A DNA stretch of 64,000 bases from Mytilus trossulus (taxonomy: Eukaryota), in contig NC_086374.1 of NCBI RefSeq assembly GCF_036588685.1, forward strand, positions 65,286,001-65,350,000, in the 5' to 3' direction. This document shows, in pieces, positions 22,154 through 61,783 of the stretch (within the stretch, counting starts at the first letter, position 1; every line of letters starts with the position of its first letter). The translations under genes and the position numbers were made by a program. The notes below the pieces were generated by a model that did not search any database, had not been told where the DNA came from, and saw only the letters and a list, made by a program, of their open reading frames with translations.

Positions 22154-22200
22154 TATAGAGGGTGCCTTGAAGCCAGGGCATAGTATTACAACTACAATTA

Positions 22201-24258: not shown

Positions 24259-24356
24259 ATATCAGTATTTTATTGTTATTAAGCTGATACACATCCATGA
24301 GGATTTTATATCAGTATTTTATTGTTATTAAGCTGATACACATCCATGAGGATTTT
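24259..24356. repeat. Exact 49-bp tandem duplication
   Basis: atatcagtattttattgttattaagctgatacacatccatgaggatttt x2. Single copy at ~41835. Confidence 0.95.
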
Positions 24357-32715: not shown

Positions 32716-34601
32716 CTATAACACAATCATATAAAACATGTTTGAAATTGATAGTGATTCTTTACTGATTACAGCAGATTTCAATGAGTGTGTAGCCAAA
32801 GGTAATATCTTTGGTTAGCTTGCTTTTTAGCTGAACCGTGAAGTAATTGTTAGGTTAGGTAAACTACCCTCCTTTCGAAGTAGCATAGTCCAACAGACAG
32901 ATTGTTTTTTTTTCTGTAGGACTAGTCTATTCTTAAAGTATACACTCCGCTGTAACATCAATTGAAATGATGTACTTCTAATAAACTGTTTGACCAATCG
33001 TTTTGTAGTATAAACGGTCAATAGCAGTCTAAATATCAATACGAAACTTTTTGGGTTCACAAAGTCAAACAGATGGTTCACTTCCATCAAGCTTGGTGCT
33101 GCTGCGGAGTATAAGTCCAGTGATGAAAATTTAATACCAACTTTTCTATTTTCTACAACTCGATTTCATTATTTCTTTTTAAACACTTTTTTCTATTGTA
33201 ATCATAATCAAGGTGATTTTAAATTGCATGATAATATTTTCCTTTCTCTCAGAATTGTTTTGGCTTGGTTTACGGTTTAAACGGTTTACGCCTTTACCTT
33301 AATTATGGTTATGTTTACCGGCAAATTTTCACTATTATAGAATTAGAGAAAATATATATAAAGGAAATATGACTTGTAAAAGGAAAAACTAAAATGAGAG
33401 TTGGAATGATAATATACATTTTTGAATAAATCAAAAGTTATTATTACTTTACTACATATTTAATATTAAATATTCCTACCATTCATTTCAGCTATCAACT
33501 TGAATCGTAGACTATCCATATATACTATAGTATACAATCAAATGTATACTCAAAACAAAAATAAAGCTGTACAAAAGTAGCGTTTTCTTTCAATACATGT
33601 ATTTCAACATCCACCTTGGTAAGAACCTGTTGTGCTATTTATATTGTAATTCAATTATTTATTAGAAAAAGCCGAACATCTTATTTTTGGCGACCGTCAG
33701 TAAATAAGACAGTCTTAAATGTATATGTGGCATTCTTTATTTCATGTCCGAAGGACGATTAACACAAACGCTAAAATTTGTAATTATTTAGTGAGAGAAC
33801 ATTATCTGCATTGCGAAGTTAAAAGATGTAAAACTAATTGTTTTACTAGACTGAAATGCTCTTTTGAAGTTGTGCTATAAAAGAAACAATAAATCGTACG
33901 ATTTCAAAACTTATAAATCATTCTTTGCAGCAAAGTTCAGAAGAAACACTTTTCATTGTTTCGATTCCTGTTAATTAATTTTATTATAACAGATGGTTGA
34001 ATAATGAGTTAGTGTCCATGTGCAAGCATTTTGTTGATCAGTATATAGGATTCACTAGAGTACATTTAACGTAGATAGATTTCACGTATTTAGGGCAGAG
34101 ACAAATAAGAGCGCCACTACACTGGGTTCATTTATTTTTTATTATATATTTATAGTTATACGTCACACAACTTTAAATTCATACTATAATCTATTTTTGT
34201 ACATTAAATAAGGAAGATATATAAGACGAACAATATCGTGGACATATTTTCATGTTTTATGCAGCATGCAAAATTGTAGCTTTATAACTGAAATTAGTGT
34301 GTTTAGTAAATATTTCATATTTCACACCAATATTTATTTTAGCATACTTAAGCATATAGTAGATAATAGATAATGCATAACAGGTTGATTATAGATGAAA
34401 GAATTGTCTAACGTATATTCCATTGTACTACATTATGCTGTAAAAATATAAATAATGTACTGACAATCACTTATTTATGTTCAAAATTGAATGTATTAAT
34501 AGTAGTCGTGAATACTAGAGATGACAATCTTTTTGCAGATCAGCGTTTTGAAGGTACAGGAGTACAATGTAACTGGAATATTAATTTGTGTTTATGTGAT
34601 T

Positions 34602-36898: not shown

Positions 36899-37054
36899 AG
36901 GGAAACCACCTCGACCAAGAAGAAGATCTAAATCAGCCTCATCAAGAGTCAGACATTATTCTCCAGATGTTAGAAACAGAGCAAAATATATTGTTAAAGA
37001 ATACTACACAGAAAGTTCAAGTGCTGAATCTGAAGATGAAATTCATGTCAGAAG
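36899..37054 (+). CDS. AKNA: Duplicate of exon 17177-17332 (copy 2; may be non-functional)
   Basis: Same length, AG/GT intact, open frame, G>V and V>I changes. Confidence 0.6.
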
Positions 37055-37677: not shown

Positions 37678-37723
37678 GGGGAGAAACAGAGGAAGAAAAG
37701 GTAGAGGAAGAAAATACAGAAAG
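37678..37723 (+). CDS. AKNA: Duplicate of exon 17767-17812 (copy 2)
   Basis: Identical exon, splice sites intact, read-through frame open to 38113. Confidence 0.6.
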
Positions 37724-40700: not shown

Positions 40701-40736
40701 ATTTAAACAAAATTAATTCCTTTATCATTTTTATAG

Positions 40737-40883
40737 GCTAGATCAGACTATGAGGATGAACTGAACCGATCACTTAATTTGACGGAAGAAATCGATGGTT
40801 TGACACGAAAAATGATGGACACCGTAGATGGAGAATTAAGACGTGCAGGAAGGAAAAAAGAATTTCGCTCATCTATTTGGTAG
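40737..40883 (+). CDS. AKNA: Duplicate of terminal exon 23172-23318 (copy 2)
   Basis: Acceptor and TAG intact. D>E and R>K plus three synonymous changes. Confidence 0.6.
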   Translation, partial: ARSDYEDELNRSLNLTEEIDGLTRKMMDTVDGELRRAGRKKEFRSSIW

Positions 40884-43800
40884 CACAGGAAAATCTCTTG
40901 CTTGGAATTATAAAAAAAAAAAATGGAAGCTGTGATATTCTGATAAGGTTCAGAACAAGATGATATAGTTAAGAAATAATTAACCAAGATAATGTAGCTC
41001 AACAATTAGACATGAGAAACTTTAGTTGATGCCTTAAATACATTAAATGATTGCCCATGACAGTATAATTAAAAAAGTGCTGGTGCTTTGTATACTAAAA
41101 AAATATATATCCTTTAGCACCGTAGAATATCATTTGTTTCTACAATACAATATAAAACTTCATTAGAATTGTATTATGATGAAAGACGTTGCATTTATAG
41201 ATGTTTTTTAAATGTTTGACCAATCAACTATATACATTGTCTGTGATATTTTTAATTTATTATAACTTATTTATATTGTTTTTTATGTTTATACCAATAT
41301 GTCTTAACAAGGATGCTTGTTATTAACTTTTGAATGAAAATTTAATGATATTTCTGAATATTGAAGTTGCAATACTTTGAGGCAATTAAAAAAGAAAAAA
41401 TCTCTATTCAGCAAAATGTTGCAATTTCTTTTTTGTATTAAAAAGTAACAGAATAAATCAGAATATCTTTTCATTTTCCATCTAAACAGACTTCTAAACT
41501 AATCTGAATTTTGATTTTTGTATGTCTTTATAATGTTTTATAGATGATAAACAATATGTGTAATTTTTAATTCCATCCAGTTATTATTTATTCTAGTATA
41601 TGTTTTAAAGTTTTACATTTTTTCATGAAGGATATTTTCCATTCCAGATATTTGTTTCAAGTTTTTTTTTGTATAATGTTTTATTATGTTTCATTTTTAT
41701 ATCTGATTCCATCCAATTTTATTATGTGGGTGATTTATGTTTTAATTTGTGTTTTATTTTAAACAGTATATATGTTTGTCTTTAGTACTCTTTACACAAA
41801 ATTTACTATCTTAAGTTTTCTTTCCGTCCCACACATATCAGTATTTTATTGTTATTAAGCTGATACACATCCATGAGGATTTTATGTTAAAACAATCTCA
41901 AGATAGAAATGAACATATCATTATCATTGTATCAAATACCATATCGTATTGTCATTTGCTCTATGGATTTTTTTGCTAAAATTTGTCAAAAAAGTATGAG
42001 GATAATTATGATATAGATTTTAACAATGGATACACAATCTTAATGGTCTCCCAACCAAATAAGGAGTTTATCCTTTAAAATAAAATACCTAGAGTTGAAA
42101 TAATCAAATGAAATTTCTTTGGAAATGTTGTTCATTACATTTAATCTGTCGTGTAAAAATGTTTCTATATGTAAAAAAAAAATCTGTTTTAAAAACCTGT
42201 TTAATTACATCAATTCTCTTGAAACTTGAAATGAAAATTCTATATTTAAGTTAAACAACAACAAATGGAAGTTTTTAACGACCTTTGCACGTCGGTTAAG
42301 ACAAACAAGAAAATTAATATTTTTTATTAATAAATCTCTTTAACTAAAATTGATCTAAATACAAGTAAACACTTAAAGTCTTATTTGTGTGCCCAAGTAG
42401 TTTATGTATAAAAAGAACCTATTCTGATTTTTAATGCACACCATTTGTTGATTTAGGTAGATGGATTTTGGGGGTTTGGATCACTCATGTCTATATTTTT
42501 TTTTGTTACTTTTTGTCTTGACTACATGTATTATTTCTTTTAAGTTTATTTCCCTTGATAATACTATGTCATTTCGCCTGTTATAAAGAGTTGTCTCATT
42601 GGCACTTGTACCACATCTCTGCATATTTTTAAAATAGTTCCATAAATGAAACATACGTAGTGCCTAAATAATTATTACAAAAGTATTTAAAATTCACCTT
42701 ACATTTTGTATTTGCATTTTCATTTCTGATACAAAGCATAGTTGGAAATGTAGTATGAAGTTATTGTAGGAAAATCAAAACTTTATTAAAAATACAATGA
42801 AACATATTCATGTAAATAAATCCATATTTTATTTTACATTTTCTGATTATAGTCATTTTATTTTTACTATCATGAACCACGAAAGATGTTATTTTCTTCT
42901 TCATGATAAAATAACAAAAATTTGATACATTTTTGTTCTTGTCAAATGACAAAAATGAGGTATTAATAGTAACTATCTTATTTAAGATTTAAGGATGAAA
43001 TGGTCAGTTTTCATTATTCTTATATACCTCTGTATTTTATGTGCCTCAACGAATTCTGAAGAAGTAATTTTACTTCTTTTTATGAAATAAGCAGAATGTA
43101 GTTTTTAAATGTATTTGAAAAGGTGAGAGGGAGAGCTCTGTGATCACATAAGCAAATTATTCAAATAACATTTATTTTGATTTCCATCCTTATTTATCAA
43201 AAAATTCAAACAAAAGCTGACATTAAAATGTATTGCTTATTAAAACAGTTCTTAAAAATGTAAAAAATAATCTTATGTTTCTCACTCAAAAGAATTTGTA
43301 TTTTTTTTTATTGTTTGAGTGTCTCATTGTTAATCCAAATAGAATACATCTTATTTAATGTATCAGTACACATATAATAGTTGCATCATCATTTAAACTT
43401 TGACCCAATTACATATGCATTAATCATGATCAGTATTTATTTGACGTTTTTAATTGATGACCATTATATATAAGGAAAAGTATATGTTAGAAGTTGTCAT
43501 GAACAGAGAGATGTGATAAGGACATTTTCTGGTCCATGGAATCTTAATTTCACTATGTAATAAATATATATCAATTATCATCTTTTACATGTCAGAGCTT
43601 ATCAGATGTTTGGAATACATTAAATATATTATTCTTATATATTACATTTTGACCCCAAACATCAAATGGTCTAATGTATGAAAAAAGCTGCAAAAAGTTC
43701 TTAAATTTCACATTTTGTAATTGAAATTTAGATATAAACATCTTCACCAAACAAGATATATGCTTTAAGATGTCTTTTACAAAGATAAAAAAAAAAGCAT

Positions 43801-44537
43801 TGCAAATATTTTTCTTGGGGTTACTTATGAAATATTGGAAAAAAATATATGGCAATTCTGAATTATTTATGATATCAATGTTATATTATCATTTAATTAG
43901 TGTACTGAAATTGACATATTTAATTTCATTAAAATTATCTATATTCAGACATTCCATATCTTTCATGTTGGTAATTTTAGGGTCTAAAAAGACTTTATCA
44001 CATCTCATTCTGTTGGAGTTACACAAACAAGATTTATCAATGTATTTTTAGAGAATAAAATACAAATAAATTATATTTATCTACAATTGACTCTTCTTAT
44101 TTATTTCCATTAGAATACACCAATTGCACACATTATTCAATGATACTGACAATTATTTTAGGCTTACTTGTAACAAAGATTGCAAAATGTGAGATATAAT
44201 TACAATGCAACAGTAAAAACTATTTTATAATAAAATTAGAAGATGTGGTATGAGAGCCTTAATGAGATAACTCAAACTAAGTCATAGTATGTCCCAAAAA
44301 AAAATTTAAAAATGAATAAAACATTATTGGTCAAAGTATGGCCTTGGCTGCTACCAAACAGTTAGTTATATAGAGCTCAAAATGACTAGTGTAAAACAAT
44401 TCAAACAATAAACCCAACTGTATACAAAACAAGAAACACTGATGAACCACACCTACAAACAACAACCACTAAACACCAGGTTCCTGGCTTTAGACAGTTG
44501 CAAACAAATGAAGTGTGTTTGAATGTTTTAACCTGTT

Positions 44538-45160: not shown

Positions 45161-47204
45161 AATTAAGGAAACTAACTCTAAATGTTTATTTTCAACCTCT
45201 TGTATTAGTACATCGTTCATATATAGCTGTGTGCTATGGCGTTTTTTTTTCTGTATTGTTATAGTAATGGGTTTGTCTTTAAACATAAATAAAATTAACG
45301 AGCCTTCGTTTAGACCATATGTTAATTTGGTGCCTATCTAAACCCCAAAAGCATGATTCAAAGACTGGAACAGAACAAAACTGCTGTTCAAAACTCATAA
45401 ATCTATGGACAAAAAACAAAATCGGGGTAACAAACTAAAACTGAGGGAAACGCATTAAATATAATAGGAGAACAACGACAAAACATTAAAATGTAACACA
45501 CAGAAACGGACTAAGCATTAGACAAAATCATATGAGAATAACAAATATAACATCAAAACCAAATACCTGAATTTGGGATAGATAAGTACCGTGACACGTT
45601 TTATAGAAATGTGAATTTACACTGAAAAATAAGAGAAAAAACGACACAACGGAAACACAACGTTAAAATGTAACACACACAGAAACGAACTATAATATAA
45701 CAATGGCCATATTCCTGACTTGGTACAGGACATTTCTATAGGAAAAAATGGTGGGTTGAACCTGGTTTTGTAGCATGCCAAACCTCCCTCTTTTAAATAT
45801 GAGTTTTTGGTGCTACTTTGAAAACCAAGATGGCTGTCACAACGGAACACAGTTTAATTACCACCAATCCCTTCCATGCTTACCAGACAAAATAAAAACA
45901 TTTTGACCTCATTACGAACACAATTGATACTATGGTTGGTGTAGAACGCCATATTGAATATTCTTTCCTTTGAAGCCAACATTAAAATTTAAGAAAAAGT
46001 ACCTGATAGTCTTGATAAAAAGGCACATATTTACGTCCATTATTTTACTTTTCACACATGGCAAATATAATTTGAAATTCCCAAATAACCCAAAACTCCT
46101 TATAAAAATCCAACAATGTCTTTCCACACTGATATATGTCCACATTTGTAATATTATAAAACACATTAATGTGTTATGTAATGATAATCTGAATATTTTA
46201 TTTGATAATATTAATGAGTGATGTTGGTATATGTATGCTAAAACTTTGAAAAAACAAATTGTTGAAAATTTACTTATTCAGAATTATATATTTTATAATA
46301 AGTCTAAAACAAGTGGACATACAAGTTAAAGAAGTATATATATAATCGTTTATGTAGTTGCATTATTGCAAATCAAACGTTTCAAAAAAAAAAATGTTAA
46401 AAACTAACATTTATATAAATATATTATTAACAAAAAATATGATCGAAACTAAAAAATAAATATATGCAACATTTTCTTTTGACCCTGGAATGCAAAGTGC
46501 CAATCAAAAGAGTAAAATTTCATTTCTGCCTCACTTTTTGGTTAAAATTTAGAAAAATACACCTCTTATTCTGATGGTTTTTTTTTCTTAAAATTTGAAT
46601 ATGACCTCTGAAGTGGCAAAACTGTACACTATCAAGCAATTTGTTTTGCATACCAAAGCGTTGATTTAGTACCTTGCTTATACAAAATTAATATTTCTAA
46701 CACCAAAGACAACTTTAGACCTAATTTCGTTTAGAAAAAGCCATTACTTGACACAAAAAGAAATTAACACAATAAAGAAAACAACGTCAATAGTTAATGA
46801 TTGTCTCTGATCTGTTATGATTATGATTACTGTCCAATGTCCTGTCCGGGAATGTTACAAAACTTTTTTGTAGGCTATACATCTATCCAGAGACAGGAGT
46901 GTATATATGTCTCTGATCTATCTGAAATGATAATAGGAAAAAAGTTATATTACATTTTTGAAATAGAGCAGTCAACACACTTGTGAATACAAATGTCGTT
47001 GTTAATAAAACATCATTTGTCTAAAATATAAAATAAAATATCTCTGTAAAATGCATTATTAAAATTCTTCTTCTTAATCTCAAACATATTTAGTTTTATC
47101 TAATTAATAACGCACGCAAGTTTTTGAACAGTTCAGGAAAATATTTTCTTTATTCAGACATGTTCTTTCAAATAAACATGGATATTTGATTATAAAGTCA
47201 CTAT

Positions 47205-47205
<1 letters not shown>

Positions 47206-47275
<70 letters not shown>

Positions 47276-47434
47276 TCTTTATTTAAAGAGGGTTGCACAG
47301 TTAGCTATAAAGCTAATCTTCCCTGAGGCCCTCATGAAATACAATGAAACATAACAAACAATTACAAAATATCAAACAGACACACATACATGAATAATGA
47401 AATAACAAATTGTCATGAAGTATACAATTTTCAT
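47206..47434 (-). mobile_element. LINE-like 3' end with AATAAA and (TTA)~22 tail
   Basis: Minus strand ...gggaagattagctttatagctaactgtgcaaccctctttaaataaagaa(tta)n. Absent from the paralogous sites ~31420 and ~57955. Confidence 0.65.
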
Positions 47435-47474
47435 AATAAACTCATCATAGATACCAGGACTAAATTTAGTAAAT

Positions 47475-47518
47475 ACGCCAGACGCGCGTTTCGTCTACAT
47501 AAGACTCATCAGTGACGC
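47475..47518 (-). ncRNA. Minimal type I hammerhead ribozyme in a retrozyme-like repeat (~47435-47617)
   Basis: gcgtca CTGATGA gtct-tatgt-agac GAAA cgcgcGTC tggcgt. Stems I and II pair; stem III is the palindrome acgcgcgt. Confidence 0.88.
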
Positions 47519-47664
47519 TCGAATCCAAAACAAAAAAGTTAAAAAGCCAAAGAAATTACGAATTGAAGAGCATTGAGGACCAAAATTCCTAAAAGTTTTG
47601 CCAATTACAGCTAAGGACATCATTTTATAGTTTTTGGTGCAACCAGAGACACATAATAGTGTTA

Positions 47665-48337
47665 TATACTAGTCAACAAAAGAAACGATACACGACTTTT
47701 TTTTTAAATTAAAGATACAGTTTTCCGTTTATAGGACCAATATTGAAGGTAGTTATACTTAATGACCATGGAAATATAAATCCGTTTACAAAAAAAATGT
47801 TTTTGCTTTCATGACGTCATTTTGCGAAATTGATTTGCCATAGACAGTATGTCATGTAAAGTGAATTTAAAATAGCGGTAACAATCTGAAAACTTATCCG
47901 AACGGTTCCAAATTTACAGTGTGTTGTTTCCATATCTAAATCATCTATTTTCTTTATTTTTTTGCTTTTTTTGAGATTTCAGAAATCACTTTTTTTTACC
48001 AAAAATAAAAAAAAAAACAATATTTCAACCAATTAGTTACAAAATGATCTTAACTTGATTAGCATATTGAATAATTTTAAACAAATTGGAAACTCATTTA
48101 GTACTTAAAAAATTGTGTATCGATTTTCTATCTAACTTTCCGCCAAAATAATTTGCACCCTATGATTGTTTTCACAGAATTTAGTTACTTTTCGACATGT
48201 TTTGATTTTTATTATCATATGTGCATACTTTTCAAATGAAAGCTTTTTAAAATAGTGTATCTCATTTGTTTATATTTAATATTTTTTGATAAATTTTAGT
48301 TCAAAGTCGTGTATCGTTTCTTTTGTTGACTAGTATA
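47665..48337. mobile_element. MITE with ~34-bp perfect TIRs in a TA site
   Basis: tatactagtcaacaaaagaaacgatacacgacttt / aaagtcgtgtatcgtttcttttgttgactagtata. Empty sites at ~31470 and ~58015. Confidence 0.92.
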
Positions 48338-49908
48338 TGTCTCTGGTGCAACATACACTACTCTGCTGTTTTTCTTGTTCACTAGACACTTATTATAATG
48401 GAATATTGTTTGTATCACATAGTACTAAATTGTCATAAGCAACGCATTTGGTATAACAAATCAGGAACATATATTTTGACATTATACTGTTCCCAGTATA
48501 AATGGTGAAGGAACTGCTATTTATCTGCAGCACCTGGGTGAAACTGTTATCGGTAACGTTCATGTTCAATTTCCGGCCCAACAAGGTGAATAGACACTGG
48601 TCTGTCTAGTTTTTAAGATATATTTTTTCCTTGGATGTCTTTTGGGTTTTTGTCTCATTAACGTTTACCTAATAGTCCCGTCTACATAGTACCGTCTTCA
48701 TCTTTTCATCACTATAAGGTATAGTATTTGGTTTTCAGCAAGAACATTGGGATATAATACTTTTGATGGTGCTCAGCAGCATTTTAAATTACGAAATTAT
48801 TTTGATTGTTACTTGATTAACCTAATCTCGAACACTTTTAACCAACGTTATGAAAAGCAGTGTCAAATCTTTATTTATACTGAAATCAGAAGATGTGGTA
48901 TGCTTGCCAATGAGAACTTTCCACTCGACACCAAATGATGTCGATGTAATTCACTGTATTACGGTTTTCAATAATGAACCAACCACATATTGTATAATAT
49001 ATAGTAAATTATGAAAAGCAAAATATATTCTAAACAGTGAGGAAAAACAACGGTCTTTTTTATGTACATATTAATAAACAGAAACGCAGAATAGAGTGAA
49101 GTTTCACACGATTGAGAATACTAGACAATGGTTTAGCAACACTATAAACAAGAACAAACTTTGAGAAACCGGTTGAATAAGGATTGACTTGTCAGGTTGA
49201 CACACACACATACGTGCACAAACCCACACACACTAAAAGGCTAAGGATATAAAGTATTAATCTAAGAGCTGGCATAGTTATGAAAGCTAGTTAAAAATCA
49301 ATCACAACTAAAAAAAAATCATGATTTCTAGACTATAATATCAATCAGTATACAACCACTGGATTAAGTGTACAATACGTCATACAGAGCCTGAAGAAAA
49401 CTTAACTTGTCCATTCATACTTTGGATAAATGACCAGTAAACTACATAGTAATAAGTTCATGCCAGGCCTATCATGCTGACTACTGGGCTTATTATACCA
49501 GCAGGGAAATTTACCCAGTTGTTGTTACATATAATTAAAGATACATTGCTTTTAATTTGATATATACATAACACGCAGTTGTTAGAATCAAGACAATTGG
49601 CATGTCAACTCAATTACGAAGTTTATTAGTACTAAAAAGTTGAAATAATCACCAATTATTTCGAAATATATTGCCAAATCTCTGTATGGCCAGTTATTCA
49701 TATAGGGGTAAACTAGAGTGTTCCGAACGATTTCAACACTTTGTCAACAGGTAACCTACAGAATAGTCTGCATCAATAATATTTCATATCTTCACAGGAG
49801 GCTAAGCTCTAGCATTGCAATACCTTCGGGTACAAAAAAATCCACTGGCAGTGATATTGACCGTGTGGTTGTTAATAGTTATCAAAGGTACCAGGATTAT
49901 ATCTTAGT

Positions 49909-49951
49909 ACGCCAAACGCGTGTTTCGTCTACATAAGACTCATCAGTGACG
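49909..49951 (-). ncRNA. Hammerhead ribozyme variant (GUU site) with an adjacent decayed core duplicate
   Basis: cgtca CTGATGA gtcttatgtagac GAAA cacgcGTT tggcg. Partial repeat at 49951-49975. Confidence 0.7.
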
Positions 49952-50742
49952 TTTCGTCTGCATAAGAATCATCACCAAAGACATCAAAATTTTAATGTAA
50001 TATATGATCACGTATGCCCTCTATATATAAATCTAATCAAATCAATTGAGAGGTTAAAGGAAATAGGGGTTTAAGAGTTATGAAAACCAAACATTCATAT
50101 ATTCTGACATCAGACTCGGACTTCTCTTGAACTGAGTTTTAATGTGCGTATTGTTATGCGTTTACTTTTCTACATTGGTTAGAGGTATAGGGGGAGGGTT
50201 GAGATCTCACAAACATGTTTAACCCCGCCGCATTTTTGCGCCTGTCCCAAGTCAGGAGCCTCTGGCCTTTGTTAGTCTTGTATTATTTTAATTTTAGTTT
50301 CTTGTGTACAATTTGGAAATTAGTATGGCGTTCATTATCACTGGACTAGTATATATTTGTTTAGGGGCCAGCTGAAGGACGCCTCCGGGTGCGAGAATTT
50401 CTCGCTACATTGAAGACCTGTTGGTGCCCTTCTGCTGTTGTTTTTTATTTGGTCGGGTTGTTGTCTCTTTGACACATTCCCCATTTCCATTCTCAATTTT
50501 ATATAAGTAGTGCCTAATTTTGATATTTGTGGATAAAACAACCATGTTTGCGGTTTTAACTAGCGGGATATCCCTTTTTTACTCACCAGTCAATGTTGAT
50601 CGAATTAAAGGTCTCGTTAAATATTTTGATGTATACGGTCAAAGTCAAAATCGTAAAGAAAAACTACGATATCTAAACGATGATTCTAGTAAATACTCAA
50701 AATAAAAAAATAAAATATCAGGAAACTTTTTTCTTCTATTAC

Positions 50743-50971
50743 CTTTCTTGCATTCCACTAATATTTCGAGTAATATGACGGTTGCTGGTCGATTCCTCTA
50801 CACCAAAGTTTGCTTCTGTAAGTAGAGGAAGTCGTATCTGACAGTTTCTCGGATCACATGGATCAGTAGACCTAAACTCATACACCATAGTCAACTGACA
50901 AGTGTTGGTTTCTGGATATCTTGTTCCACTAGGAACTAATTGAGACGGATATCCAACAGACTCTTCCTGGA
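50743..50971 (-). pseudogene. Paralogous exon-like ORF (229 nt, open)
   Basis: Lies within ORF 50739..51095. Splice dinucleotides are at equivalent positions. Confidence 0.5.
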
Positions 50972-52289
50972 CTACAACATAATCATATGTAACATGTATG
51001 AAATTGATAGTGATTCTTTTTTTTTTAATAAAATGTAAAGATGACATACTTCTAATAAACCGTTTGTCCCACCGTTTTGACGCACTTTTCAACATCTGTT
51101 TTGTACCACTCGATTTTTCGCGATGATTAACATAATAAAAGTGTTTTTAAATTGCATGATAATGGGTGTTTTTCTTTTCTTTCTGGACTCTTCTGGTTTG
51201 GTCTGATGTAGAATCATTCGGAGAATAGGGAATAGTAACCTTTAATTATTGTAATGTTTACCGGTAAAATTTCACATAACTCTAGAATGCAGAGAAAATA
51301 TATGAAGCAAAAAATAACCTGCAAAAAGAAAGAATGAAATAAACATACTAGTAATGATAATATGAAATATCAAAATAAATTAAAAGTTATTATAACTTAA
51401 CTACATATCATATTTTGAACGTTCTTACCATTCATTTCAACTATCAACTTCAATTATCGACGATATCCATGTGAACCAGAATATACTAAAAACATAACAA
51501 AAAATATCTCGCTCTTTGTATTGTAAATCAAGTATCAGTAGTTATTAGAAGAAAATCATTAATTTATTCATCGAACTTCTAATGAAACATTTATATCGTA
51601 TGATTTAAAAACTTAGAAAAATTGCGCCCCAGTAAAAAGTGGATAACAACGATCTTGTTTCATTTCCTTTGTTATGATTAATAGTAGCACAATTAAATAT
51701 ATGATTTAATGAGTACCCGTAATGCATGTTATACTATTAAACCGTTGAAATGTGAACTTGTTTGATAAGATTTGATCTTTTTCGATTACTATCATTTTAT
51801 AGATCATTTGGTGCGTATTATAAGAATACATTTGTACTATTAACTACTTTAAGTACGTTAGATAAGGAAGAAGATTTATAATATGAAAAAGATGAAAAAA
51901 GTGGCTACTAGAAAAGGACGAAAGGTCTTAAAAAACCCACAAACTGGAATTTATCTTTGTTTGAGACGGCTCCATTAATTCGGAATAACTTTAGTTCTTA
52001 TCGAAAAAAACTGCCACATTTATGAGAAAATGCAGTACGATTGCCAAATATCAAAATTTAAGTCATAATGTAACATAAAATATTGTCTCCCAACGAATAT
52101 TGTACGCGGACATTAAAGAATTATAAAAGAAATAATAAAAACCCAATTTGTTCAGAGAATCATTGAAGGTCTTTCCACATCATTTTTTTTAAATTACTGA
52201 TGAGAAGCTAACTTCGAATTACTCAAAGAAATTATTGGCGTCCAAGCATATCATGTGTCTTCATTCTAATTCTTCTAATGGTCTTCACC

Positions 52290-53560
52290 TTCACTAAACA
52301 AGATATATATGTTTTAAGATGTCTTTTACAAAGATAAAAAAAAAGCATTGCATTGCCAAATACCTTTCTTGGGGCCCAATGATTAATTATTGGAAAAACT
52401 ATATGGCAATTATGAATTATTTATGATATCAATGTTATATTATCATTGAATAAGTGTACTGAAATTAGCATATTTAATTTAATTTAAATTATCTGTATTC
52501 AGAGATTCCATATCTTTCATGTTGGTAATTTTTGGGTCCAAAAAAAGACTTTATCACATCTCATCCTATTGGAGTTACACAAATAAGATTTATCAATGTA
52601 TTTTTAGAGAAAGAAATACAAATGAATTATATTTATCCTCAATTGACTCTTCCTTATTTAATTTATCTGCAATTGTCTCTCCTTTATTTGATTTAATTAT
52701 AACACAAGACATTTTTACGGACGTCATCACAAGTTGGTTGACTGTTATCGAATAATCGTTTCACCGATGATATGGCATATGTTTCTTATGTCGTAACTAC
52801 AATACCCTTCCCTTTTCATGAATATGACCTACAGAATCAGACTATTTTCCGGGTTTGTGATAACATAAGCAACATGACGGGTGCCATATGTAGAGCAGGA
52901 TCTTTTTACCGTTCTGGAGCACGTGAGATCCCCAGTTTTTGGTGGGTTTCGTGTTGCTCAGTCTTTAGTTTTCTATGTTGTTTCATATATGTAACATAAT
53001 ATGTCTATATGTCGTTTTTATTTTTAGCCAAGGGTTTGTCAGTCGATTTATGCGTTTGACTGTTCCCCTGGTATATTTCGCACCCTTTTAATTGCACATA
53101 ATTACTCTTCAATGATACTGACAATTATTTCAGCGTTGCTTGCGACATAAATTGCAAAATGTGAGATATAATTACAATGCATCAGCAGAAACTATTTCAT
53201 AAGAAATTTAAAAAAAATGTGATATGAGAACCTTGATGAGACAACTCTCCATCTAAGACACAATGTATAAAAAAATAAACCATTATAGGTCAAAATACGG
53301 CCTTAATCACAGAGCCTTGGCTTCTACTAAACAGTAAACGTTGTCAGTTTATTTTCGATTTATGAGTTTGATTGTCCATTTGGTATCTTTCGTACCTCTT
53401 TTACAGTAAGTTATTAAGGCCTAAAAATTACTAGTTTAAAACAATTCAAATAAGAATGCCATCAGTCTAATATGTATACAAAACAAGAAACATATATGAA
53501 CCATATCAACAAACGAAAACCCCTAAACGTCAGGTTTCTAGCTTTAGACAGTTGCCAAAC
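52290..53560 (+). repeat. Third copy of segment ~26235-26680 / 43745-44510
   Basis: Shared caaagataaaaaaaa(a)gcattgca...ggagttacacaaa(c/t)aagattta. Confidence 0.85.
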
Positions 53561-53849
53561 ATTTTTGTTTTGGCATTTGAATTCTCACTTATTACAAGTA
53601 AGAGGTAAGTAAGTGGTAATTACCACCCGTGACTACATTTATATATAATCGCGACTACAGTGGGTTTTTTAATATATATTTATAATAGTTATGCGTCACA
53701 CAACTTTAAATTCTTACTATAATCTATTTTTAAAAGAACATTGATTCAGGAAGATATATAAAATGATAAATTAAAAATAGAGGAATCATAGTCATCATAT
53801 ATACCTGAGACCACTCAACCTTAACACATGTGTTATAAATAGTTTGGTC

Positions 53850-55576
53850 AGTATATGCTGATCAACTTAATGCTTGCACACGTAAACTGAAACTAACTTA
53901 TATTTCATTATACAACCATTTATTATAATAAATTAATTTACAGGAATCGAAACAATAGAAAGTGTTTCTTTTGATCTTTGAGTCAACTTTGCTTCAAAGA
54001 ATGATTTATAAGTTTTGAAATCGTATGACTTGTTTCTTTTCATTGAATAGCACAACTCCAAGAGAGCGTTTTAGAATAAAAAACAATTATTTTTACCTCT
54101 GTTAACTTCTCAACGAAGATATTTTTCTCTCATTGAATAATTACAATTTTTACGGTTTTTATTCATCGTCCTTCGAATATGAAATAAAAAATGCCACATA
54201 TACATTTAAGACTGTCTTATTTACTGACGGTCCTCAAAAATAAGATGTTTGGCTTTTTCTGATAAATAATTGAATTACAGTACAAAAAACAGGTTCCAAG
54301 CAAAGTGGATATTGAAATATATGTGTTGAAAGAAAACTTTGAACTTTTGTACAGCTTTGTTTTTGTTTTGAGTATACATTTGATTGTATATATGGATAGT
54401 CTACGAATCAAGTTGATAGCTGAAATGAATGGTATGAAATCTTAATATAAAATATGTAGTTAAGTAATAATAACTTTTAATTTATTTTAATAATGATATA
54501 TATAATCATTACTATGCTTACTTAAGTCTTTCTTTTAACAATGCCTCTGCTGGTGGACTATTAGTCCCCGAGGGTATCACCAGCCCAGTAGCCAGAACAT
54601 CGACACTGGCATGAAAATACGGATTTTTTGTGTTATTAAAATTTGCTGTTACAAAATGATAGAAATTATTATAAATTAAGGAATATATCTTTCTCGTGCA
54701 AAACTCTGATTCTTTTCACGGATTTGGCTATACTTTTTGGACCTTTTGGATTATAGCTCTTCAACTTTGATATAAGCTTTGTATATTAAATATTTTGGCA
54801 ACGAGCATCACTGAAGAGACATGTATTGTCGAAATGCGCATCTGGTGCAAGAAAATTGGTACCGTTAGTTTTATTAATTAAATAGCTGAAATGAATGGTA
54901 TGAAACCTTAATATAAAATATGTAGTTAAGTAATAATAGCTTTTAATTTATTTAAATAATGATATATATAATCATTACTATGCTTACTTAAGTCTTTCTT
55001 TTTAACAAGTCATATTTACTTTATATTTATTTTCACTGCATTCTAGAATAGTGAAAAATTGCCCGTAAACATAACCATAATTAAGGTAATGGCGTTAACC
55101 TATTTTTCCTTCAACTATTCCCAGAATCAGCAAAAAAGCTTCATATTTACCTTATTAATATCAATTTGATTTTTTTTAAACATTTATCATGTATTATGTT
55201 TCTTGTCACTTGTGTATACTATGTTTGCATTTTAACCCGTCAGGGTTTCACTTTTTTCAATAAAGTTTATGATATATATATTTAGACTGCTATCGACCGT
55301 TTATGCTACAAAACGGTGGGCCAAACAGTTTATTAGAAGTACATCATTTCAATTCTTTTAATCAGAAAAGAATCCCTATCAATTAGACATGATTATATAA
55401 TTATGTTGTAGTCCAAGAGGAGTCTGTTGGAAATCTGTCTCAAGTAGTTCCTAGTGGAACAAGATATACGTCGCAAGTAGTACTAATTAGTGGAACGAGA
55501 TATACAGAAACCAACAATTGTCAGTAGACTATGGTGTACGAGTTTGGGGCAACTGATCCTTGTGATCCAAGAAACA
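53850..55576 (-). repeat. Inverted partial copy of the block (~60100-61400 / ~32555-34045)
   Basis: The reverse complement matches, e.g. ttagactgctatcgaccgtttatgctacaaaacggtggg (~55282) versus ~60321-60359. Confidence 0.9.
54805..54848 (+). ncRNA. Minimal type I hammerhead ribozyme in a ~340-bp retrozyme-like insertion (~54541-54882)
   Basis: gcatca CTGAAGA gaca-tgtat-tgtc GAAA tgcgcATC tggtgc. Palindromic stem III atgcgcat. Confidence 0.88.
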
Positions 55577-58500
55577 GAAAGTTCCATACCACAAAGAAAT
55601 GGTTAGGATAAGCTTTGGGGTGGGGGCTTTGGCTCAAACCTTTTAGGAATTAGGGGAGAAACAAGGGTTTAACGGTTTAAGGAAAAAAACTTAAGTACAA
55701 TACATAATTTAAAAGCAGTCTGATGGAGCGTTCAAACATATTTATGACAATATCTTGAGCACTAAAACAAAAATAAAAATTCATATCATATAAACAATTC
55801 TAATTTTTTTTACTACAGCTATTCTATGTCAAAAACCTATTATGTGTCAAATAGTTAATTACAATCCAAATTCAGATCTTTATCAATCGTGGATATTGTT
55901 TCCACCCCCCCTCCCCCAAATTGAACAGGGTTGGACCTCTACTTACGTATCCAATTACGCTCGACGAAGCAATTTATTTCATTAAGGTTATGGATGTCTC
56001 TCTGGTATTGTTTAAAGTCTCACCCAATATATTTTTGATTTTGTATTTACATTTTGTCTTAGATCAAATTTATTCGTTCAAAGTATAATCACTTGTTTTT
56101 GTGTTTGTTAATATGTCTTTTGGTTGAGTTAAGCCATTTCCATTGATATTTTATAGTTTAACTTTCAATGTTCTGATGTTACACTATTGTATTAGGTGAC
56201 GATGAAGGTTGGTACCTATCAAAACGTTTAAACCCGCTGTATTTATTTGCACTTGTGACCTGTCCTAAGTCAGGAACCTGATGTTAAGTGGTTGTTGTTT
56301 GTTGATGTGGTTCATAAGTGTTTTTTTCTAAATATTATATTTGATCGTTGGTTTTCCTGTTTTAATGGTTTTACTCAAGTCATTTTTTGGGACCCTTTAT
56401 AGCTTTCTGTTCGAAGTGAACCACGGCTCTGTGTTGAAGATCGTACTTTGACCTTACTTGATGGTTTACTTTTACAAATCGTGACTTGGACGGAGAGTTG
56501 TCTCATTTGCACACTTACCACCTTACTCTATATAGGACATTATTGGAAATCCATACCTGATTTTTTTATTTATCTTACAGAACCAGTTGCAAGCCTTTAA
56601 ACTAAATGTGTCATAATAATACTTTGTTGATTCTAAATTTAAGATTTTAGTGCTTATTTGGTATCCAAGATGGCCGTCACGACGGAACACAGGTTACAAT
56701 CAACCTTTCCATGCCTACCAGAGAAAAAAAACTTTTGCATAAACATATTGACCTTATCACGAACATAATTTATACTATGATGGTTGGAGAACGCCATATT
56801 GAATATTTATGTTCTTTCTTTTGAAGACAACATTTAAATTTCAGGAAAAGTACCTGACAGTCTTAATAAAACGGAACATAGACACTTTCATTATTTTACT
56901 TTTCATACATGGCAAATATAATTTGAAATTCCCAAATAACCCAAAACTCCTTATACAAATCCAACAATGTCTATCCACACTGATATATGTCCACATTTGT
57001 AGAATTATAAAACCCATATATGTGTTATGTTATGATAATCTGAATATTTTATTTCATAACATTATTTTGTTATATTGGTATATGTATGCTAAAAATTTGA
57101 AAACATTTGTTATCAGTGAACACAAATTGTTGAAAATTCACTAACTCAGAATTATATTTTATAATAAGTAAAACAAGTTATAAGTTAAAGTAGTTTATAT
57201 ATATATATCTTTTATGTAGTTGCATTATTACAAATCAAACGTTTCAATATGAAAAAAAAATATATGTTCAAAACTAACATTTATATATATATTATTAACA
57301 AAAAATATGTCCGAAACTTAAAAAAAATATATGCAACATTTTCTTTTGACCCTAGAACGCAACAAAAATTGATCAAAAGAAAAGTGGCAATCCAAAGTGT
57401 AAAATTTCATTTCTGCCTCATTTTTTGTTTAAAATTTAGAAAATATACCTCTTATTCTGATGTTTGTTTCTTAAAATTTGAAAATGACCTCTAAAATGGC
57501 AAACCCGTACAATATTAAGCAATTTGTTTTGCATACCAAAGTGTTGATTTAGAATCTTGCTTATGAAAAATCAATTTCTAAAATCAAAGACAACTTTAGA
57601 CCTGATTTCGTTTAGAAAAAAAGCCACAACTTAAACAATAAAGAAAACAACGTCAACAGTTAATGATTGTCTCTGATATGATTTAAATTCATAATGTTAT
57701 GATTATGATTACTGTCCAATGTCCAGTTCGGGAATGTTACAAAACTTCTTTGTAGGCTATACATCTATCAAAAGACATGTGTGTATATATGTGTCTCTGA
57801 TCTATCTGTAATGATAAAAGAAAAGATTTTTTTTTCATATTTAATTCATGGATAAGAGCAGTCAACATACTTGTGATTACAAATGTTACATATATATATA
57901 TAATTCAGACATGTTCCTTCAAATAAACATGGATATTTGATGGTAAAGTCACTACTCAATGACATCATGTTCTAGTTTTGGGTACAACCAGAGAAATACT
58001 ATAGTATTATATATATATATATATGTCTATGGTGGAACATAAACTACTCTCCTGTTTTCCTTGTTCACTAGACACTTAAAATGGAATATTGCGTGCATCA
58101 CATTGTCCTAAGGACTGCATCGGGTATTACAAATCAGGAACATATAGATTGATTTTCTGTCCCAAGTACAAATGGTGTAGGAACTGCTATCCACTTATCC
58201 GCAGCACTTTGGTGTTATCGGTTACTTTCATGTCCAGTCTTTCATCTTTTATGCTTCACTATGTGTATCTTCGTTGCTTTCTTTTATTTGAATTCATTGA
58301 TGACAATCTTTGTGTTACTTAATCGTGGCCATTTATAGCAAAACAAATTAAATACACATTGTCCTGTTAAGTGATAAATATAAACAAAAATCCCTGGATG
58401 TCTTTTAGGTTTTTGTGTAATAGAGTTGACGTCTCATTAACGTAAACTCCACAGTTATGTTTGTTCAGCTTTTCCTCATTGTGTGTATAAGATATATTAT

Positions 58501-59996
58501 TTTCTTTTGAGTGAGAACATATCATACTAGTGAAAGTAGCAACATTTTAAAATAACTTTGATTGTTACTTTATTAACCCAATCTGGAAGTTAAAAAGCAC
58601 TATAAACCAACCAAATCAGTTTTTCAAAAGACATACGATGTTGAAGAGTTGTGAAAACCAAATATTCCGAAAAGCAGTGCCACATTTTCTTAACAGTTAG
58701 GATTCTACTTCGTCAAAATTATCTCCCCATTACGCCAGTTAGTTTTCACAACCGTAAAAATGAAAGCCATTTTTGGGATGACGCGCTGCCTATTTTGCTC
58801 TTGAAAACCGATAAATTTATCTGCATAGCACCATTACGATCCTCATATGTCAGTTGTATTTTAAAAGACAAATGTATCTACTAGCTAATTAGCAACAGTT
58901 AAAAAACTTAAATTTATTGTCTAATCGGTTGTCAGGTGGAATTTTGAAAATTCATAAAAAAAATCTAATTGAATATTTTTTAGGAAGGGCAGACTAGATT
59001 TGTTTAGTGGTTGAAGACTATTAACCTTTAGTTATCACAAACAAAAAACAATATTTTATTCGAAGATATGCTTTTCCATCATCCGACTTGAAAGACTGTC
59101 GTCAAGTACTTTTAATAAAAAATATCTATTAGAACACACCTACTCTATTTTTATGATTCATTAGTTAGGTATTTCACTTGACCCATATATTTCATCTTTT
59201 AGTACTGTGATTTTTTTATGTTATAAAGTCAACCTGTAGGTTTGATATATAAAATGATTGAATCTGAAGCGAGATGATGTATCAAATATTCTTGATTTTC
59301 AAGTAAAAATATTCAACTCAAACATGCCCAACATAAAAAGGTGCACTCGATTTTCTCTTTTGAATACAATTGTTACCCATTTTTTAGATTTTTTTCTTGA
59401 GTCACATAAGGCAAGGGCAGACACGAAAATTACCGAACTAATAGATTGATATGTTTTCCGTCCGTGGTAATTTTTTTTTAAATCAGAGGTTATGCATTTT
59501 CTACATCCAACTTGATAGATTGCCATGTCGTCGACTTGATATCTAATTGTTCTGCTTAACGATGTAATAGATAAATTGAAACCTTATGCAAATGGTGTTT
59601 TTATAATAGAACACTTCGTAATTGAGAAGAAAATTGTAATTTGATTTGTTTCTATTAACTTTAAATTTTTTGTTACTATAGTAAACATTACAGTAAGCAT
59701 TTATTGCCTTCTCTAATAAAGAGTTTCGATTCTTTTGTTCTATTTCAACCAGGTTTCCGCCTGTTACGGAAACCTTTAGATTCTATCTATGGATATAAAA
59801 ACCTAGTTTCGACAGATTTTAACGGGTTTTACTGGTGTGGTATCTTCTTTATTACTTATCATTTAGTGTTTGTTGAATCAAAAGTCTTGGCCAAAGTTAA
59901 AATCGTAAAGAAAAACTATGATATTGATAAATATTTAACTAGTAAATACTAGTACTCAAAATAAAAAAAAATCAGGAAATCTTTATCTTCAATTAC

Positions 59997-60225
59997 CTCT
60001 CTTGCATTCCACTGATATTTCAATTTAGATGACGGTTACTGGACGATTCCTCTATCCCAAAGTTTTCTTCTGTAAGAAGGGGAAGTCGTATTTGACAGTT
60101 TCTCGGATCACTAGGGTCAGTTGACCTAAACTCATACACCATAGTCCATTGACAATTGTTGGTATCTGGATATCTTGTTCCACTAGGAACTACTTGAGAC
60201 GGATATCCACCAGACTCTTCCTGAA
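59997..60225 (-). pseudogene. Paralogous exon-like ORF with in-frame TGA
   Basis: 229 nt, splice sites intact, TGA at 60020-60022 where the other copies have CGA. Confidence 0.5.
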
Positions 60226-61783
60226 CTATAATACAATCATATAAAACATGTATGAAATTGATAGTGATTCTTTTCTGATTAAAAGCAATTGAAGTGATGT
60301 ACTTCTAATAAACTGTTTGTCCCACCGTTTTGTAGCATAAACGGTCGATAGCAGTCTAAATATAAATATGAAGCATTTTATGTTGACAAAGCCAAACGGA
60401 TGGATCATTCCCACCAAGCTTTTTTGTACTGCGGAGTATAAGTCCAGTGATAAAAACTCAATACCATCTTTTCTGTATTCTATTCTGTTTTCTACCACTC
60501 GATTTCATTTAAACGTCAATTTTTTTTTATAGTAATCATAATCAAAGTGATTTTAAATTGCATGATAATGTTTTTTCTTTCTTTTGGGATTGTTCTGGCT
60601 TGATCTGATTTTGGTAATAGTTGAAGGGAAAATTGGTTTACGCCTTTACCTTAATTATGGTTATGTTTACCGGCAATTTTTCACTATTCTAGAATGCAGA
60701 GAATATATATAAAAAGTAAATATGACTTGTAAAAAGAAAGACTTAAATAAGCATAGTAATGATAATATCATTATTAAAATAAAGAATTATTATTACTTAA
60801 CTACATATTTTATATTAAGATTTCCTACCATTCATTTCAGCTATCAATTTGAATCATTGACTTTCCATACAATCACATGTATACTCAAAACAAAAACAAA
60901 GCTGTGCAAAAGTTGCATTTTCTTTTTATACATGTATTTCAACATCCACTTTGCTTGTAACCTGCTATTTGTAACTGCAATTCAATTATTTATTAGAAGA
61001 AGCCGAACATCTTATTTTTGACGACCGTCAGTAAAAAAATGTGTCTTAAAGTTTTTAAATGTGTCTGTGGCATTTTTTATTTCATGTTCGAATGACGATG
61101 AACACCAACCGTAAAAATTGAAGTTATTTAGTGAGAGAACACCATCTTCGTTGAGAAGTTAAAAGATGTAAATATAATTGTTTTATATTCTAAAACGCTC
61201 TCTTGGAGTTGTGCTTTTCAATGAAAAGAAACAAGTCATACGATTTCAAAACTTATTAATCATTCTTTGCAGCAAAGTTGACTCAAAGATCAAAAGAAAC
61301 ACTTTCTATTGATTCGATTCCTGTAAATTAATTCATTATAATAAATGGTTGTATAATGAAATATGAGTTAATGTGCAAGCATTTTGTTGATCAGTATATA
61401 TGAGTATTACACCCGAATAATCGAATATATCCCACGTGACTTAACTATAAGTGAGGTCGGAAAAGTCGCGTAACTATATAAAGTAGTATTTACATAGTAA
61501 ATCCCTTCGGCCCCGACTTCAGTAAGCCGACAGAACATTACTCGCACCGGCTACTTTTTATTAACCCGAATACTGTCAGTCGTTATATTCCGCTGATCTC
61601 CGTCTAATCTCCGATTGCTACATAGGCTATAGGCCGCTAGAGGGCGCAGAATTATTGGAGTTACGTTTATATATATTTATATATATATACAACTCGTCTA
61701 AACATCAACCCAACAATGTTAGATATGTAAAATTTGCTTTCGCAAATTTTTGGTTCTTCCCTCACCGGGATTCGAACCCATGC

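What the first reader, a model, noticed from the sequence alone, without database searches (positions are those of the whole stretch)
54417..55007. Hammerhead retrozyme-like monomer flanked by a ~124-bp direct duplication
Seen: a ~340-bp element (~54541-54882) carries an intact hammerhead core. It sits between two near-identical ~124-bp copies (54417-54540 and 54883-55007) of sequence that is single-copy in the paralogous blocks (~60730-60843, ~33375-33493). Known: minimal hammerheads with palindromic stem III are typical of Penelope-like elements and non-LTR retrozymes, which produce small circRNAs in mussels. Typical TSDs are under ~20 bp. Inference: this is a very long TSD, or a repair-templated insertion of a circular ribozyme RNA, which would bear on how retrozymes integrate.
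Basis: partly seen in the sequence, partly recalled or inferred. Interest (0 to 1): 0.8.

Follow-up and report, generated by a model that had tools for sequence, protein, structure and literature searches.

The report
Mussel retrozyme copy with 126-bp target duplication
A single copy of a known mussel ribozyme-bearing mobile element sits between two copies of a 126-base stretch of host DNA, an unusually long but genuine footprint of its insertion.

Summary
Window 54541-54876 is one 336-nt unit of a ~350-nt tandem-repeat family with an intact minimal type I hammerhead (54805-54848, cleavage after 54842). The family fits the published description of Mytilus non-LTR retrozymes. The unit lies between two direct copies of host DNA (54416-54541 and 54882-55008, 123 of 127 identical). 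That DNA is single-copy in three local paralogous blocks and absent elsewhere in the genome.

The copy ends at the family's fixed 3' terminus (...TTATTA), 34 nt past the ribozyme cleavage site. In 59 family arrays the 3' end is fixed and the 5' end varies (21 nt to 11 units). This is the pattern of target-primed reverse transcription on a circular or multimeric RNA. I therefore read the 126 bp as a very long target-site duplication.

It is rare but not unique. One other array has a clean ~552-bp duplication of unique DNA and one has a probable 387-bp duplication. Most arrays have none beyond about 9 nt. Long target duplications are already documented for other non-LTR elements. Other notes of this scan report retrozymes elsewhere in this genome. 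Verdict: a real feature, a new member of a known kind, of moderate interest.

The parts
54416..54541 (.). Upstream copy of the duplicated target (126 nt, ATAGCTG...AACAA). Base 54541 (A) could belong to the target or to the element.
54541..54876 (+). One 336-nt unit of the ~350-nt retrozyme repeat. It lacks the 14 nt (CTAYCACTGGGTCG) that join units in arrays. It ends at the family's fixed 3' terminus (...TTATTA). GC is 35.7% and there is no open frame above 58 aa.
54805..54848 (+). Minimal type I hammerhead: helix I GCAUCA/UGGUGC, core CUGAAGA...GAAA, helix II GACA/UGUC, palindromic UGCGCA in place of helix III. The predicted cleavage is after 54842. It is identical to the commonest family variant.
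   Evidence: 193 of 242 pattern matches in the loci carry this exact string; no Rfam hit
54877..54881 (+). 5-nt filler ATTAA between the element's 3' terminus and the downstream target copy. Its origin is unknown.
54882..55008 (.). Downstream copy of the duplicated target (127 nt).
60727..60844 (-). Closest paralogous empty site (87-90% to the flanks). The target is present once and flanks continue on both sides.
33374..33495 (-). Second paralogous empty site (about 84-85%).
51324..51450 (-). Third, more diverged paralogous empty site (about 79-82%).

Best explanation
A non-autonomous hammerhead retroelement (non-LTR retrozyme) RNA was copied into this site by target-primed reverse transcription.

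Proposed steps. A nick in the bottom strand between 54415 and 54416 gave the primer. Reverse transcription started at the family's fixed internal start site (...CUUAUUA, 34 nt 3' of the ribozyme cleavage site). It ran across the cleavage and ligation site, so the template was a circular or uncleaved multimeric RNA. It stopped 14 nt short of one full round. The 5' end of the new copy was then joined to the top strand 126 bp downstream of the first nick instead of a few bp. Fill-in duplicated those 126 bp.

Shown: the anatomy, the empty sites, the fixed 3' end and variable 5' ends of the family, and the rarity of long duplications. Inferred: the order of events, the nature of the template, the enzyme (a Penelope-like or LINE reverse transcriptase), and how the distant second join arose.

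With a single hammerhead the copy cannot release a unit-length RNA by itself, so it is most likely a dead-on-arrival copy.
For: (1) The 126/127-nt repeat abuts the insert exactly and is single-copy in three paralogous blocks. The flank DNA occurs nowhere else in the 1.30-Gb genome (5 matches, all inside the window).

(2) The two copies are 96.85% alike but only 79-90% like the paralogs, and they share derived states. Copy 2 therefore came from copy 1, not from a paralog.

(3) The insert belongs to a ~350-nt repeat family (223 matches, a lower bound; arrays with period 350-351).

(4) In 59 independent arrays with both ends in hand, every 3' end lies at ...CTTAT(TA). The 5' ends vary from 21 nt to 3882 nt. 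The 59 comprise 32 from the BLAST-chosen sample and 27 from the 3'-end-pattern sample.

(5) In the 27 pattern-chosen arrays there is no pile-up of 34-nt copies ending at the ribozyme cleavage site. The lengths nearest 34 nt are 23 and 37 nt.

(6) Other clean cases exist. L044 has a ~552-bp duplication, 97.5% identical, that abuts both ends. Its first ~470 nt are present only twice in the genome. L043 has a 387-bp duplication present only twice in the genome, starting at +1 after the 3' end.

(7) Short contigs from public runs cover both junctions: run X1, record 5 covers 54847-54936 with 0 differences; run X2, record 13 covers 54442-54594 with 4 differences.

(8) Precedent: variable TSD length in PLEs is explained by variable distance between the two strand cuts. 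Long TSD-like duplications are reported for L1, Dualen and R9.
Against: Long duplications are rare in the family. 53 of 59 arrays show no such flank duplication of non-repeat DNA. Junction matches of 6 nt or more occur in only 11 of 59 arrays, against 7.1% in a shuffled-pair control. The usual second-strand join is therefore close by or leaves no duplication, and a 126-bp stagger needs a special explanation.

No empty allele, and no allele with the duplication alone, could be looked for properly. The runs are short Logan contigs, no listed piece spans the whole structure, and X2 and X3 have no depth over 54926-55141.

Five filler bases at the 3' junction are unexplained.

Four apparent long flank repeats were not target duplications: L007 and L075 (abundant repeat families), L041 (a minisatellite) and L049 (unique DNA but the wrong geometry). 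Such signals need checking one by one. L022 and L071 were not checked.

The reverse transcriptase partner was not identified.
Confidence: 0.75

Rival explanations
1. One-step break repair. A broken or stalled replication end first primed on retrozyme RNA or cDNA, then re-invaded the sister or template strand 126 bp behind the break by microhomology-mediated or break-induced synthesis. Insert and duplication arise together without a second endonuclease cut. The outcome looks like a long TSD, but the second half of the event is host repair.
For: Most family members show little or no TSD, so a dedicated second-strand cut at a fixed distance is not evident. In L044 the 5' join lies in a 12-nt patch where target and element agree at 9 of 12 positions, and the 3' join shares 4 nt. 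[quoted passage not shown]
Against: The 3' end of the insert is the canonical family terminus, so at least the first step is ordinary target priming. In the window the 5' join shares only 1 nt. Sequence alone cannot separate this from a distant second nick.
Confidence: 0.12
2. The 126-bp tandem duplication existed first in this paralog, and the element later inserted exactly at the junction of the two copies.
For: The region lies in locally duplicated DNA, so duplications do occur here.
Against: It needs an insertion at one exact base of the region. The same exact geometry recurs independently at L044, in unique DNA. None of the three paralogs carries the tandem duplication.
Confidence: 0.05
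3. Assembly artefact. Two haplotype versions of the flank were placed on either side of a heterozygous insertion.
For: The two copies differ by about 3%, which could be allelic divergence in a heterozygous bivalve (my assumption, not tested). L044 lies on a small 1.25-Mb contig.
Against: Independent short contigs match the element-to-copy-2 junction exactly (X1) and the copy-1-to-element junction (X2, from another study). Contigs also cover copy 2 into the right flank (X1 record 6, X4 record 32). No simple assembler error gives this order.
Confidence: 0.05

Closest known systems
Non-LTR retrozymes of Mytilus galloprovincialis (Cervera and de la Pena 2020, PMC7229834; passages read)
   Same: Type I hammerhead lacking the loop-loop contacts. 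Repeats of about 350-390 bp, found as dimers up to large multimers. Low GC (35.7% here) and no coding capacity. The authors' proposed mobilisation is a target-primed or RNA-primed reverse transcriptase copying a circRNA into tandem cDNA.
   Different: This is a solo unit (336 of ~350 nt) with one hammerhead. The paper says only that TSDs, when present, are larger than 4 bp. In the passages I read it does not describe a fixed 3' terminus, a 5'-truncation spectrum or long duplications. I did not compare this sequence with the published clones.
Penelope-like elements (pLTRs with minimal hammerheads; PMC8557442, PMC3846280 and preprint 10.64898/2026.07.22.740005; passages read)
   Same: Minimal hammerhead with a palindrome in place of helix III. 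Head-to-tail partial tandems. 5' truncation. Variable or absent TSD with microhomology at the 5' join. Short terminal redundancy resembling the PLE 'tail': arrays of n units plus 11-31 nt. An inverted 5' fragment at L048.
   Different: There is no RT/GIY-YIG reading frame here. PLE TSDs in the passages read are 8-10 bp or none. No link of this family to a particular PLE was tested.
Very long target-site duplications of other non-LTR retrotransposons: R9 of rotifers (126 bp) and Dualen-4b of Chlamydomonas (median 900 bp), both as cited in PMC9977147; large TSDs at L1 insertions (10.1101/2024.12.14.628481)
   Same: Host DNA of 100 to 1000 bp is duplicated on both sides of a reverse-transcribed insert whose 3' end abuts the downstream copy.
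   Different: In R9 and Dualen the long duplication is the family rule or a majority outcome. Here it is a minority outcome (2 solid plus 1 probable of 59 arrays) of a non-autonomous ribozyme element.

Membership tests
Non-LTR retrozyme (metazoan hammerhead tandem-repeat retroelement) | Type I hammerhead with intact catalytic core | tested here: met
   Motif and helix check at 54805-54848. There is no Rfam support. Self-cleavage was not assayed.
Non-LTR retrozyme (metazoan hammerhead tandem-repeat retroelement) | Family members occur as head-to-tail repeats of a few hundred bp (350-390 bp in Mytilus) | tested here: met
   Arrays have a period of 350-351 bp, up to 11 units within a locus and longer beyond the loci. 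The window copy itself is a solo unit.
Non-LTR retrozyme (metazoan hammerhead tandem-repeat retroelement) | Low GC, non-coding, no LTR/PBS/PPT | tested here: met
   GC is 35.7% and the longest stop-free stretch is 58 aa. The flanking repeat is host DNA, not part of the element. PBS and PPT were not searched for.
Non-LTR retrozyme (metazoan hammerhead tandem-repeat retroelement) | Expressed as self-cleaved linear and circular RNA | not tested
   Only DNA-type contig runs were laid. This solo copy has one hammerhead and could not release a unit by itself.
Non-LTR retrozyme (metazoan hammerhead tandem-repeat retroelement) | Sequence identity to the published Mytilus retrozyme clones | not testable with these tools
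Target-site duplication from target-primed reverse transcription | Duplicated sequence abuts both ends of the insert and is single-copy at an empty site | tested here: met
   Alignment A1 and blastn. The empty sites are paralogs, not alleles.
Target-site duplication from target-primed reverse transcription | Insert has the family's defined 3' end next to the downstream copy, with a variable 5' end | tested here: met
   All 59 arrays examined end at ...CTTAT(TA). The 5' start phases are spread over the unit.
Target-site duplication from target-primed reverse transcription | Typical length (under about 20 bp) | tested here: not met
   It is 126 bp here. The family norm is 0-9 nt. It is therefore an atypical, long TSD.
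Penelope-like element | RT plus GIY-YIG endonuclease reading frame, or a pLTR derived from such an element | not tested
   The element has no ORF.

The most novel reading that the evidence does not exclude
The family's genomic copies may be direct footprints of rolling-circle, target-primed reverse transcription on a circular ribozyme RNA.

Observed features that fit: synthesis starts at one fixed internal site 34 nt past the ribozyme cleavage site. It runs through the ligation site. It tends to stop inside the hammerhead or when it returns to its own start. 13 of the 38 arrays of 300 nt or more start within -15 to +31 nt of a whole number of rounds (P about 9e-4). The window copy and two others stop at exactly n rounds minus 14 or 15 nt.

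On this reading, the rare 126-552-bp target duplications mark a distinct way of closing the event: the cDNA end is captured far downstream on the target, by microhomology or a replication-coupled step, rather than at a nearby second cut.
Probability: 0.25. Interest if true: 0.7.

Novelty: new member of a known kind. Interest (0 to 1): 0.42.

Why it matters
How metazoan retrozymes re-enter the genome is still only a model: a reverse transcriptase of a PLE or LINE copying a circRNA. This locus has built-in empty sites in its paralogs, which gives an unambiguous insertion anatomy.

Together with 58 other arrays it shows three things. The 3' end is fixed and lies internal to the ribozyme-processed RNA. 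The 5' end is variable. Host DNA duplications of 100-550 bp occur occasionally.

This supports a continuous (circular or multimeric) template and target priming. It also gives concrete sequence signatures for a genome-wide or experimental test. The long duplication itself is not new in kind, because other non-LTR elements make them.

Tried and rejected
1. Campbell-like integration of a 466-nt circle carrying the 126-bp stretch. Rejected: the 126-bp sequence is never associated with the element elsewhere and exists only in the four local blocks.

2. Copy 2 templated from a paralog (ectopic repair). Rejected: copies 1 and 2 are 96.85% alike but at most 90% like any paralog.

3. Long flank repeats as a general family feature.
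- L007 is an abundant repeat (7895 first-look candidates; the other flank is no closer than unrelated copies).
- L075 is an abundant tandem family of about 575 bp.
- L041 lies in a roughly 32-bp minisatellite.
- L049 is unique DNA present twice, but the copies do not abut the array. It is unresolved.
- L043 is unique DNA present twice and starts at +1, but 308 nt of an abundant repeat sit between the upstream copy and the array. I rate it probable only.
- L022 and L071 were not checked for copy number.

4. The autonomous partner. L069, L072 and L083 share the last 21 nt of the element followed by (TTA)n. They are 99% identical copies of one low-copy stretch without a reverse transcriptase frame. 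This is no lead.

5. Rfam found no hammerhead.

6. The RNA fold of the unit is no more stable than shuffles (z = 0.54).

7. The read test for an empty allele or a duplication-only allele was inconclusive. Only short Logan contigs were available, and 21 further joints and most records were not shown.

8. Searches for prior description of retrozyme TSD lengths or a fixed 3' end (and passages) found only the statement that TSDs, when present, are larger than 4 bp. Supplements (for example Supplementary Figure S9 of PMC7229834) were closed and may hold more.

Full report
**What is there**

The window is G000:C2:65286001-65350000 of a 1.30-Gb genome in 541 contigs. Between 54416 and 55008 the sequence reads: target copy 1, element, 5-nt filler, target copy 2.
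- Copy 1 is 54416-54541 and copy 2 is 54882-55008. They are 126 and 127 nt long and differ by three substitutions and one single-base indel.
- An alignment with the three paralogous blocks in the window (60727-60844, 33374-33495 and 51324-51450, all on the minus strand) shows the same stretch once, with the left and right flanks continuing on either side.
- A search of the whole genome with the closest paralog returns five matches, all inside this window. The duplicated DNA is therefore local, non-repetitive sequence, and the paralogs serve as empty sites.
- The two copies resemble each other far more (96.85%) than any paralog (79-90%). Copy 2 was therefore made from copy 1 after the paralogs diverged.
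- The blocks are part of a set of local segmental duplications.

**The element**

Window 54541-54876 matches a repeat family with at least 223 matches in the genome, a lower bound. In arrays the period is 350-351 bp.
- The window copy lacks the 14 nt (CTAYCACTGGGTCG) that link the end of one unit to the ATGCC start of the next.
- It carries a hammerhead at 54805-54848: helix I of 6 pairs, CUGAAGA, helix II of 4 pairs, GAAA, a palindromic UGCGCA in place of a real helix III, then UC and the cleavage site after 54842.
- This 44-nt string is the commonest variant in the family: 193 of 242 pattern matches in the loci, with overlapping loci counted more than once.
- Rfam does not detect it at gathering score or at E<=10, so the ribozyme assignment rests on the motif check. 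Cleavage was not tested.
- The unit has 35.7% GC and no open frame above 58 aa. Its fold is not unusually stable.
- These features fit the description of the Mytilus galloprovincialis non-LTR retrozymes: about 5000 type I hammerheads without loop-loop contacts, in repeats of about 350-390 bp, expressed as abundant circRNAs (PMC7229834, passages).
- I could not compare sequences with the published clones. The organism names of the runs that hold this stretch are coded, apart from 'mollusc metagenome' and 'gill metagenome'.

**How the family sits in the genome**

I collected two samples of arrays with both ends in hand.

Sample 1 came from the best BLAST matches to the window unit (30 loci and 19 further places).
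- I dropped loci that show the same array twice and arrays that run off a locus: L002, L004, L011-L015, L017-L020 and L023-L028.
- This leaves 32 arrays.

Sample 2 came from a pattern search for the exact last 20 nt followed by a base other than C.
- The search found 51 places. 12 were already in sample 1.
- 30 of the 39 new ones could be fetched. The last 9 could not.
- After removing three duplicates (L068, L072, L083), 27 remain.

In all 59 arrays the 3' end lies at ...CGTTAATCTTAT(TA), while the 5' end varies.
- In sample 2, which is not biased by length, 22 of 27 copies are shorter than one unit (21 to 329 nt).
- No copy ends at the ribozyme cleavage site. Such a copy would be 34 nt long. 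The nearest lengths are 23 and 37 nt.
- The fixed end lies 34 nt downstream of the cleavage site (54842 versus 54876).
- A ribozyme-processed linear unit could therefore not serve as template for copies that cross this site. The template must be continuous there, either circular or an uncleaved multimer.
- This is the pattern expected from target-primed reverse transcription with 5' truncation. It agrees with the model in PMC7229834 of a primed circRNA giving tandem cDNA.

**5' start phases**

The 5' ends are not uniform over the unit.
- 20 of 59 fall at unit positions 270-314, inside the hammerhead.
- Among the 38 arrays of at least 300 nt, 13 start at positions 320-350 or 1-16. Their lengths are a whole number of units minus 15 to plus 31 nt.
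- The expected fraction is 13.4%, giving a binomial P of about 9e-4. All 13 are in sample 1 (13 of 32); sample 2 has 0 of 6.
- The window copy, L008 (686 nt) and L016 (1036 nt) start at position 15, 15 and 16, that is, one, two and three rounds minus 14 or 15 nt.
- Seven others carry an 11-31-nt terminal redundancy. This resembles the 30-40-bp 'tail' described for Penelope-like elements.
- I read this, with caution, as the enzyme stalling when it comes back to its own start on a circle. The sample is small and partly chosen by BLAST.

**Is the long duplication typical?**

It is not typical.
- Exact matches between the two junctions of 6 nt or more occur in 11 of 59 arrays (18.6%). The control, pairing the 5' junction of one locus with the 3' junction of another, gives 7.1%. 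The longest match is 9 nt.
- A BLAST of each upstream flank against its downstream flank flagged nine loci.

The window and L044 are clean.
- In L044 (C30:970200-973600) a 408-nt array lies between two copies of about 552 bp that are 97.5% identical and abut both ends.
- Of the 551-nt query, the first ~470 nt occur only twice in the genome.
- The 3' join shares TATT with the target. The 5' join lies in a 12-nt patch where target and element agree at 9 positions.

L043 is probable.
- A 387-bp stretch occurs only twice in the genome, at 85% identity, and starts at +1 after the array.
- However, 308 nt of an abundant repeat lie between the upstream copy and the array.

The others are not target duplications or are unresolved.
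- L049 has unique flank DNA present twice, but with the wrong geometry.
- L007 and L075 are copies of abundant repeats.
- L041 lies in a minisatellite.
- L022 and L071 were not resolved.

The count is therefore 2 solid and 1 probable long target duplication in 59 arrays.

**Reading**

The canonical 3' terminus says the first half of the event was ordinary target priming at a bottom-strand nick between 54415 and 54416.

The unusual part is the second half. The 5' end of the copy was joined to the top strand 126 bp downstream. Either the second break was that far away, or the cDNA end was captured there by host repair or replication.

Passages on PLEs attribute variable TSD length to variable distance between the two cuts. 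PLE insertions with 8-10-bp TSDs, with none, and with microhomology joins are described in PMC3846280.

Long target duplications are documented elsewhere:
- 126 bp in rotifer R9 elements, and a median of 900 bp for de novo Dualen-4b insertions (PMC9977147);
- 1-10-kb tandem duplications at L1 insertions, 'regarded as large TSDs' and ascribed to break-induced replication (preprint 10.1101/2024.12.14.628481).

A 2026 preprint argues that animal retrozymes derive from PLE pLTRs. In the passages read it does not analyse their target duplications.

**Rivals**
- A pre-existing tandem duplication hit exactly at its junction is unlikely. The same geometry recurs at L044, and no paralog has the duplication.
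- An assembly artefact is unlikely. Short contigs of two runs from different studies match the two junctions (X1 record 5; X2 record 13), and others cover both outer boundaries.
- These are contigs, not reads, and none spans the whole structure. No joint that skips the element was among those shown, but 21 joints were not shown.
- A one-step repair event cannot be told apart from a distant second nick by sequence.

**Verdict**

The element is a member of a published family, and long target duplications are a known, if rare, outcome of this class of mechanism. The more informative result is the family-wide insertion anatomy, which needs a larger census before it can be relied on.

Other notes of this scan report retrozymes with target duplications elsewhere in this genome, and a ribozyme-bearing insertion with a (TTA)n tail at 47206-47617 of this window. 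I checked only the latter, and only in part.

Noticed in passing
window 47206-47660 (minus strand): A second hammerhead type (GCGTCA-CTGATGA-...-GAAA-CGCGCG-TC, at 47518-47475) is followed about 200 nt later by a long (TTA)n tail at 47206-47276. The retrozyme's own 3' end, C(TTA)2, resembles such a tail. Both might use a reverse transcriptase that primes on UUA repeats.
   Followed up: partly
window 49909-49952 (minus strand): A degenerate copy of the second hammerhead type, with TT instead of TC at the cleavage site and a non-palindromic stem III.
   Followed up: no
L001, L008, L016 and ten other arrays: The 5' ends of arrays cluster at a whole number of units (minus 15 to plus 31 nt) and inside the hammerhead (unit positions 270-314). 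Three arrays, including the window copy, stop at exactly n units minus 14 or 15 nt.
   Followed up: partly
L048:2282-2362, next to the array at 1233-2284: An 81-nt inverted fragment of the element lies head-to-head at the 5' end of an array. This resembles the inverted 5'-truncated copies of Penelope-like elements, or L1 twin priming.
   Followed up: no
L055 (5' junction) and L044:2789-2934: The 5' ends of retrozyme copies are joined directly to the ...GATAACTAT end of an abundant element. L005 carries the same abundant element in the flank just downstream of its 3' end. These may be template-switch chimeras. L043 likewise has 308 nt of another abundant repeat at its 5' end.
   Followed up: partly
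L069, L072, L083: Three 99%-identical copies of a stretch contain only the last 21 nt of the element followed by (TTA)3-4. There is no reverse transcriptase frame within 2.4 kb upstream.
   Followed up: partly
window 54589-54608: In array copies this stretch is a perfect hairpin with a TTCG loop (GCCAGTAC-TTCG-GTACTGGC). The window copy has four changes there that break the inner pairs.
   Followed up: no
window 54473: A contig of run X2 that spans the copy-1-to-element junction has G where the reference copy 1 has A. G is the state of copy 2 at the matching position. This could be polymorphism or conversion between the two copies.
   Followed up: no
window 16741-34047 vs 36447-44187 and 45791-61400: Large local segmental duplications at 75-95% identity make up much of the window. 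The block around the finding is an inverted copy of 60.6-61.4 kb and 33.3-34.0 kb.
   Followed up: no
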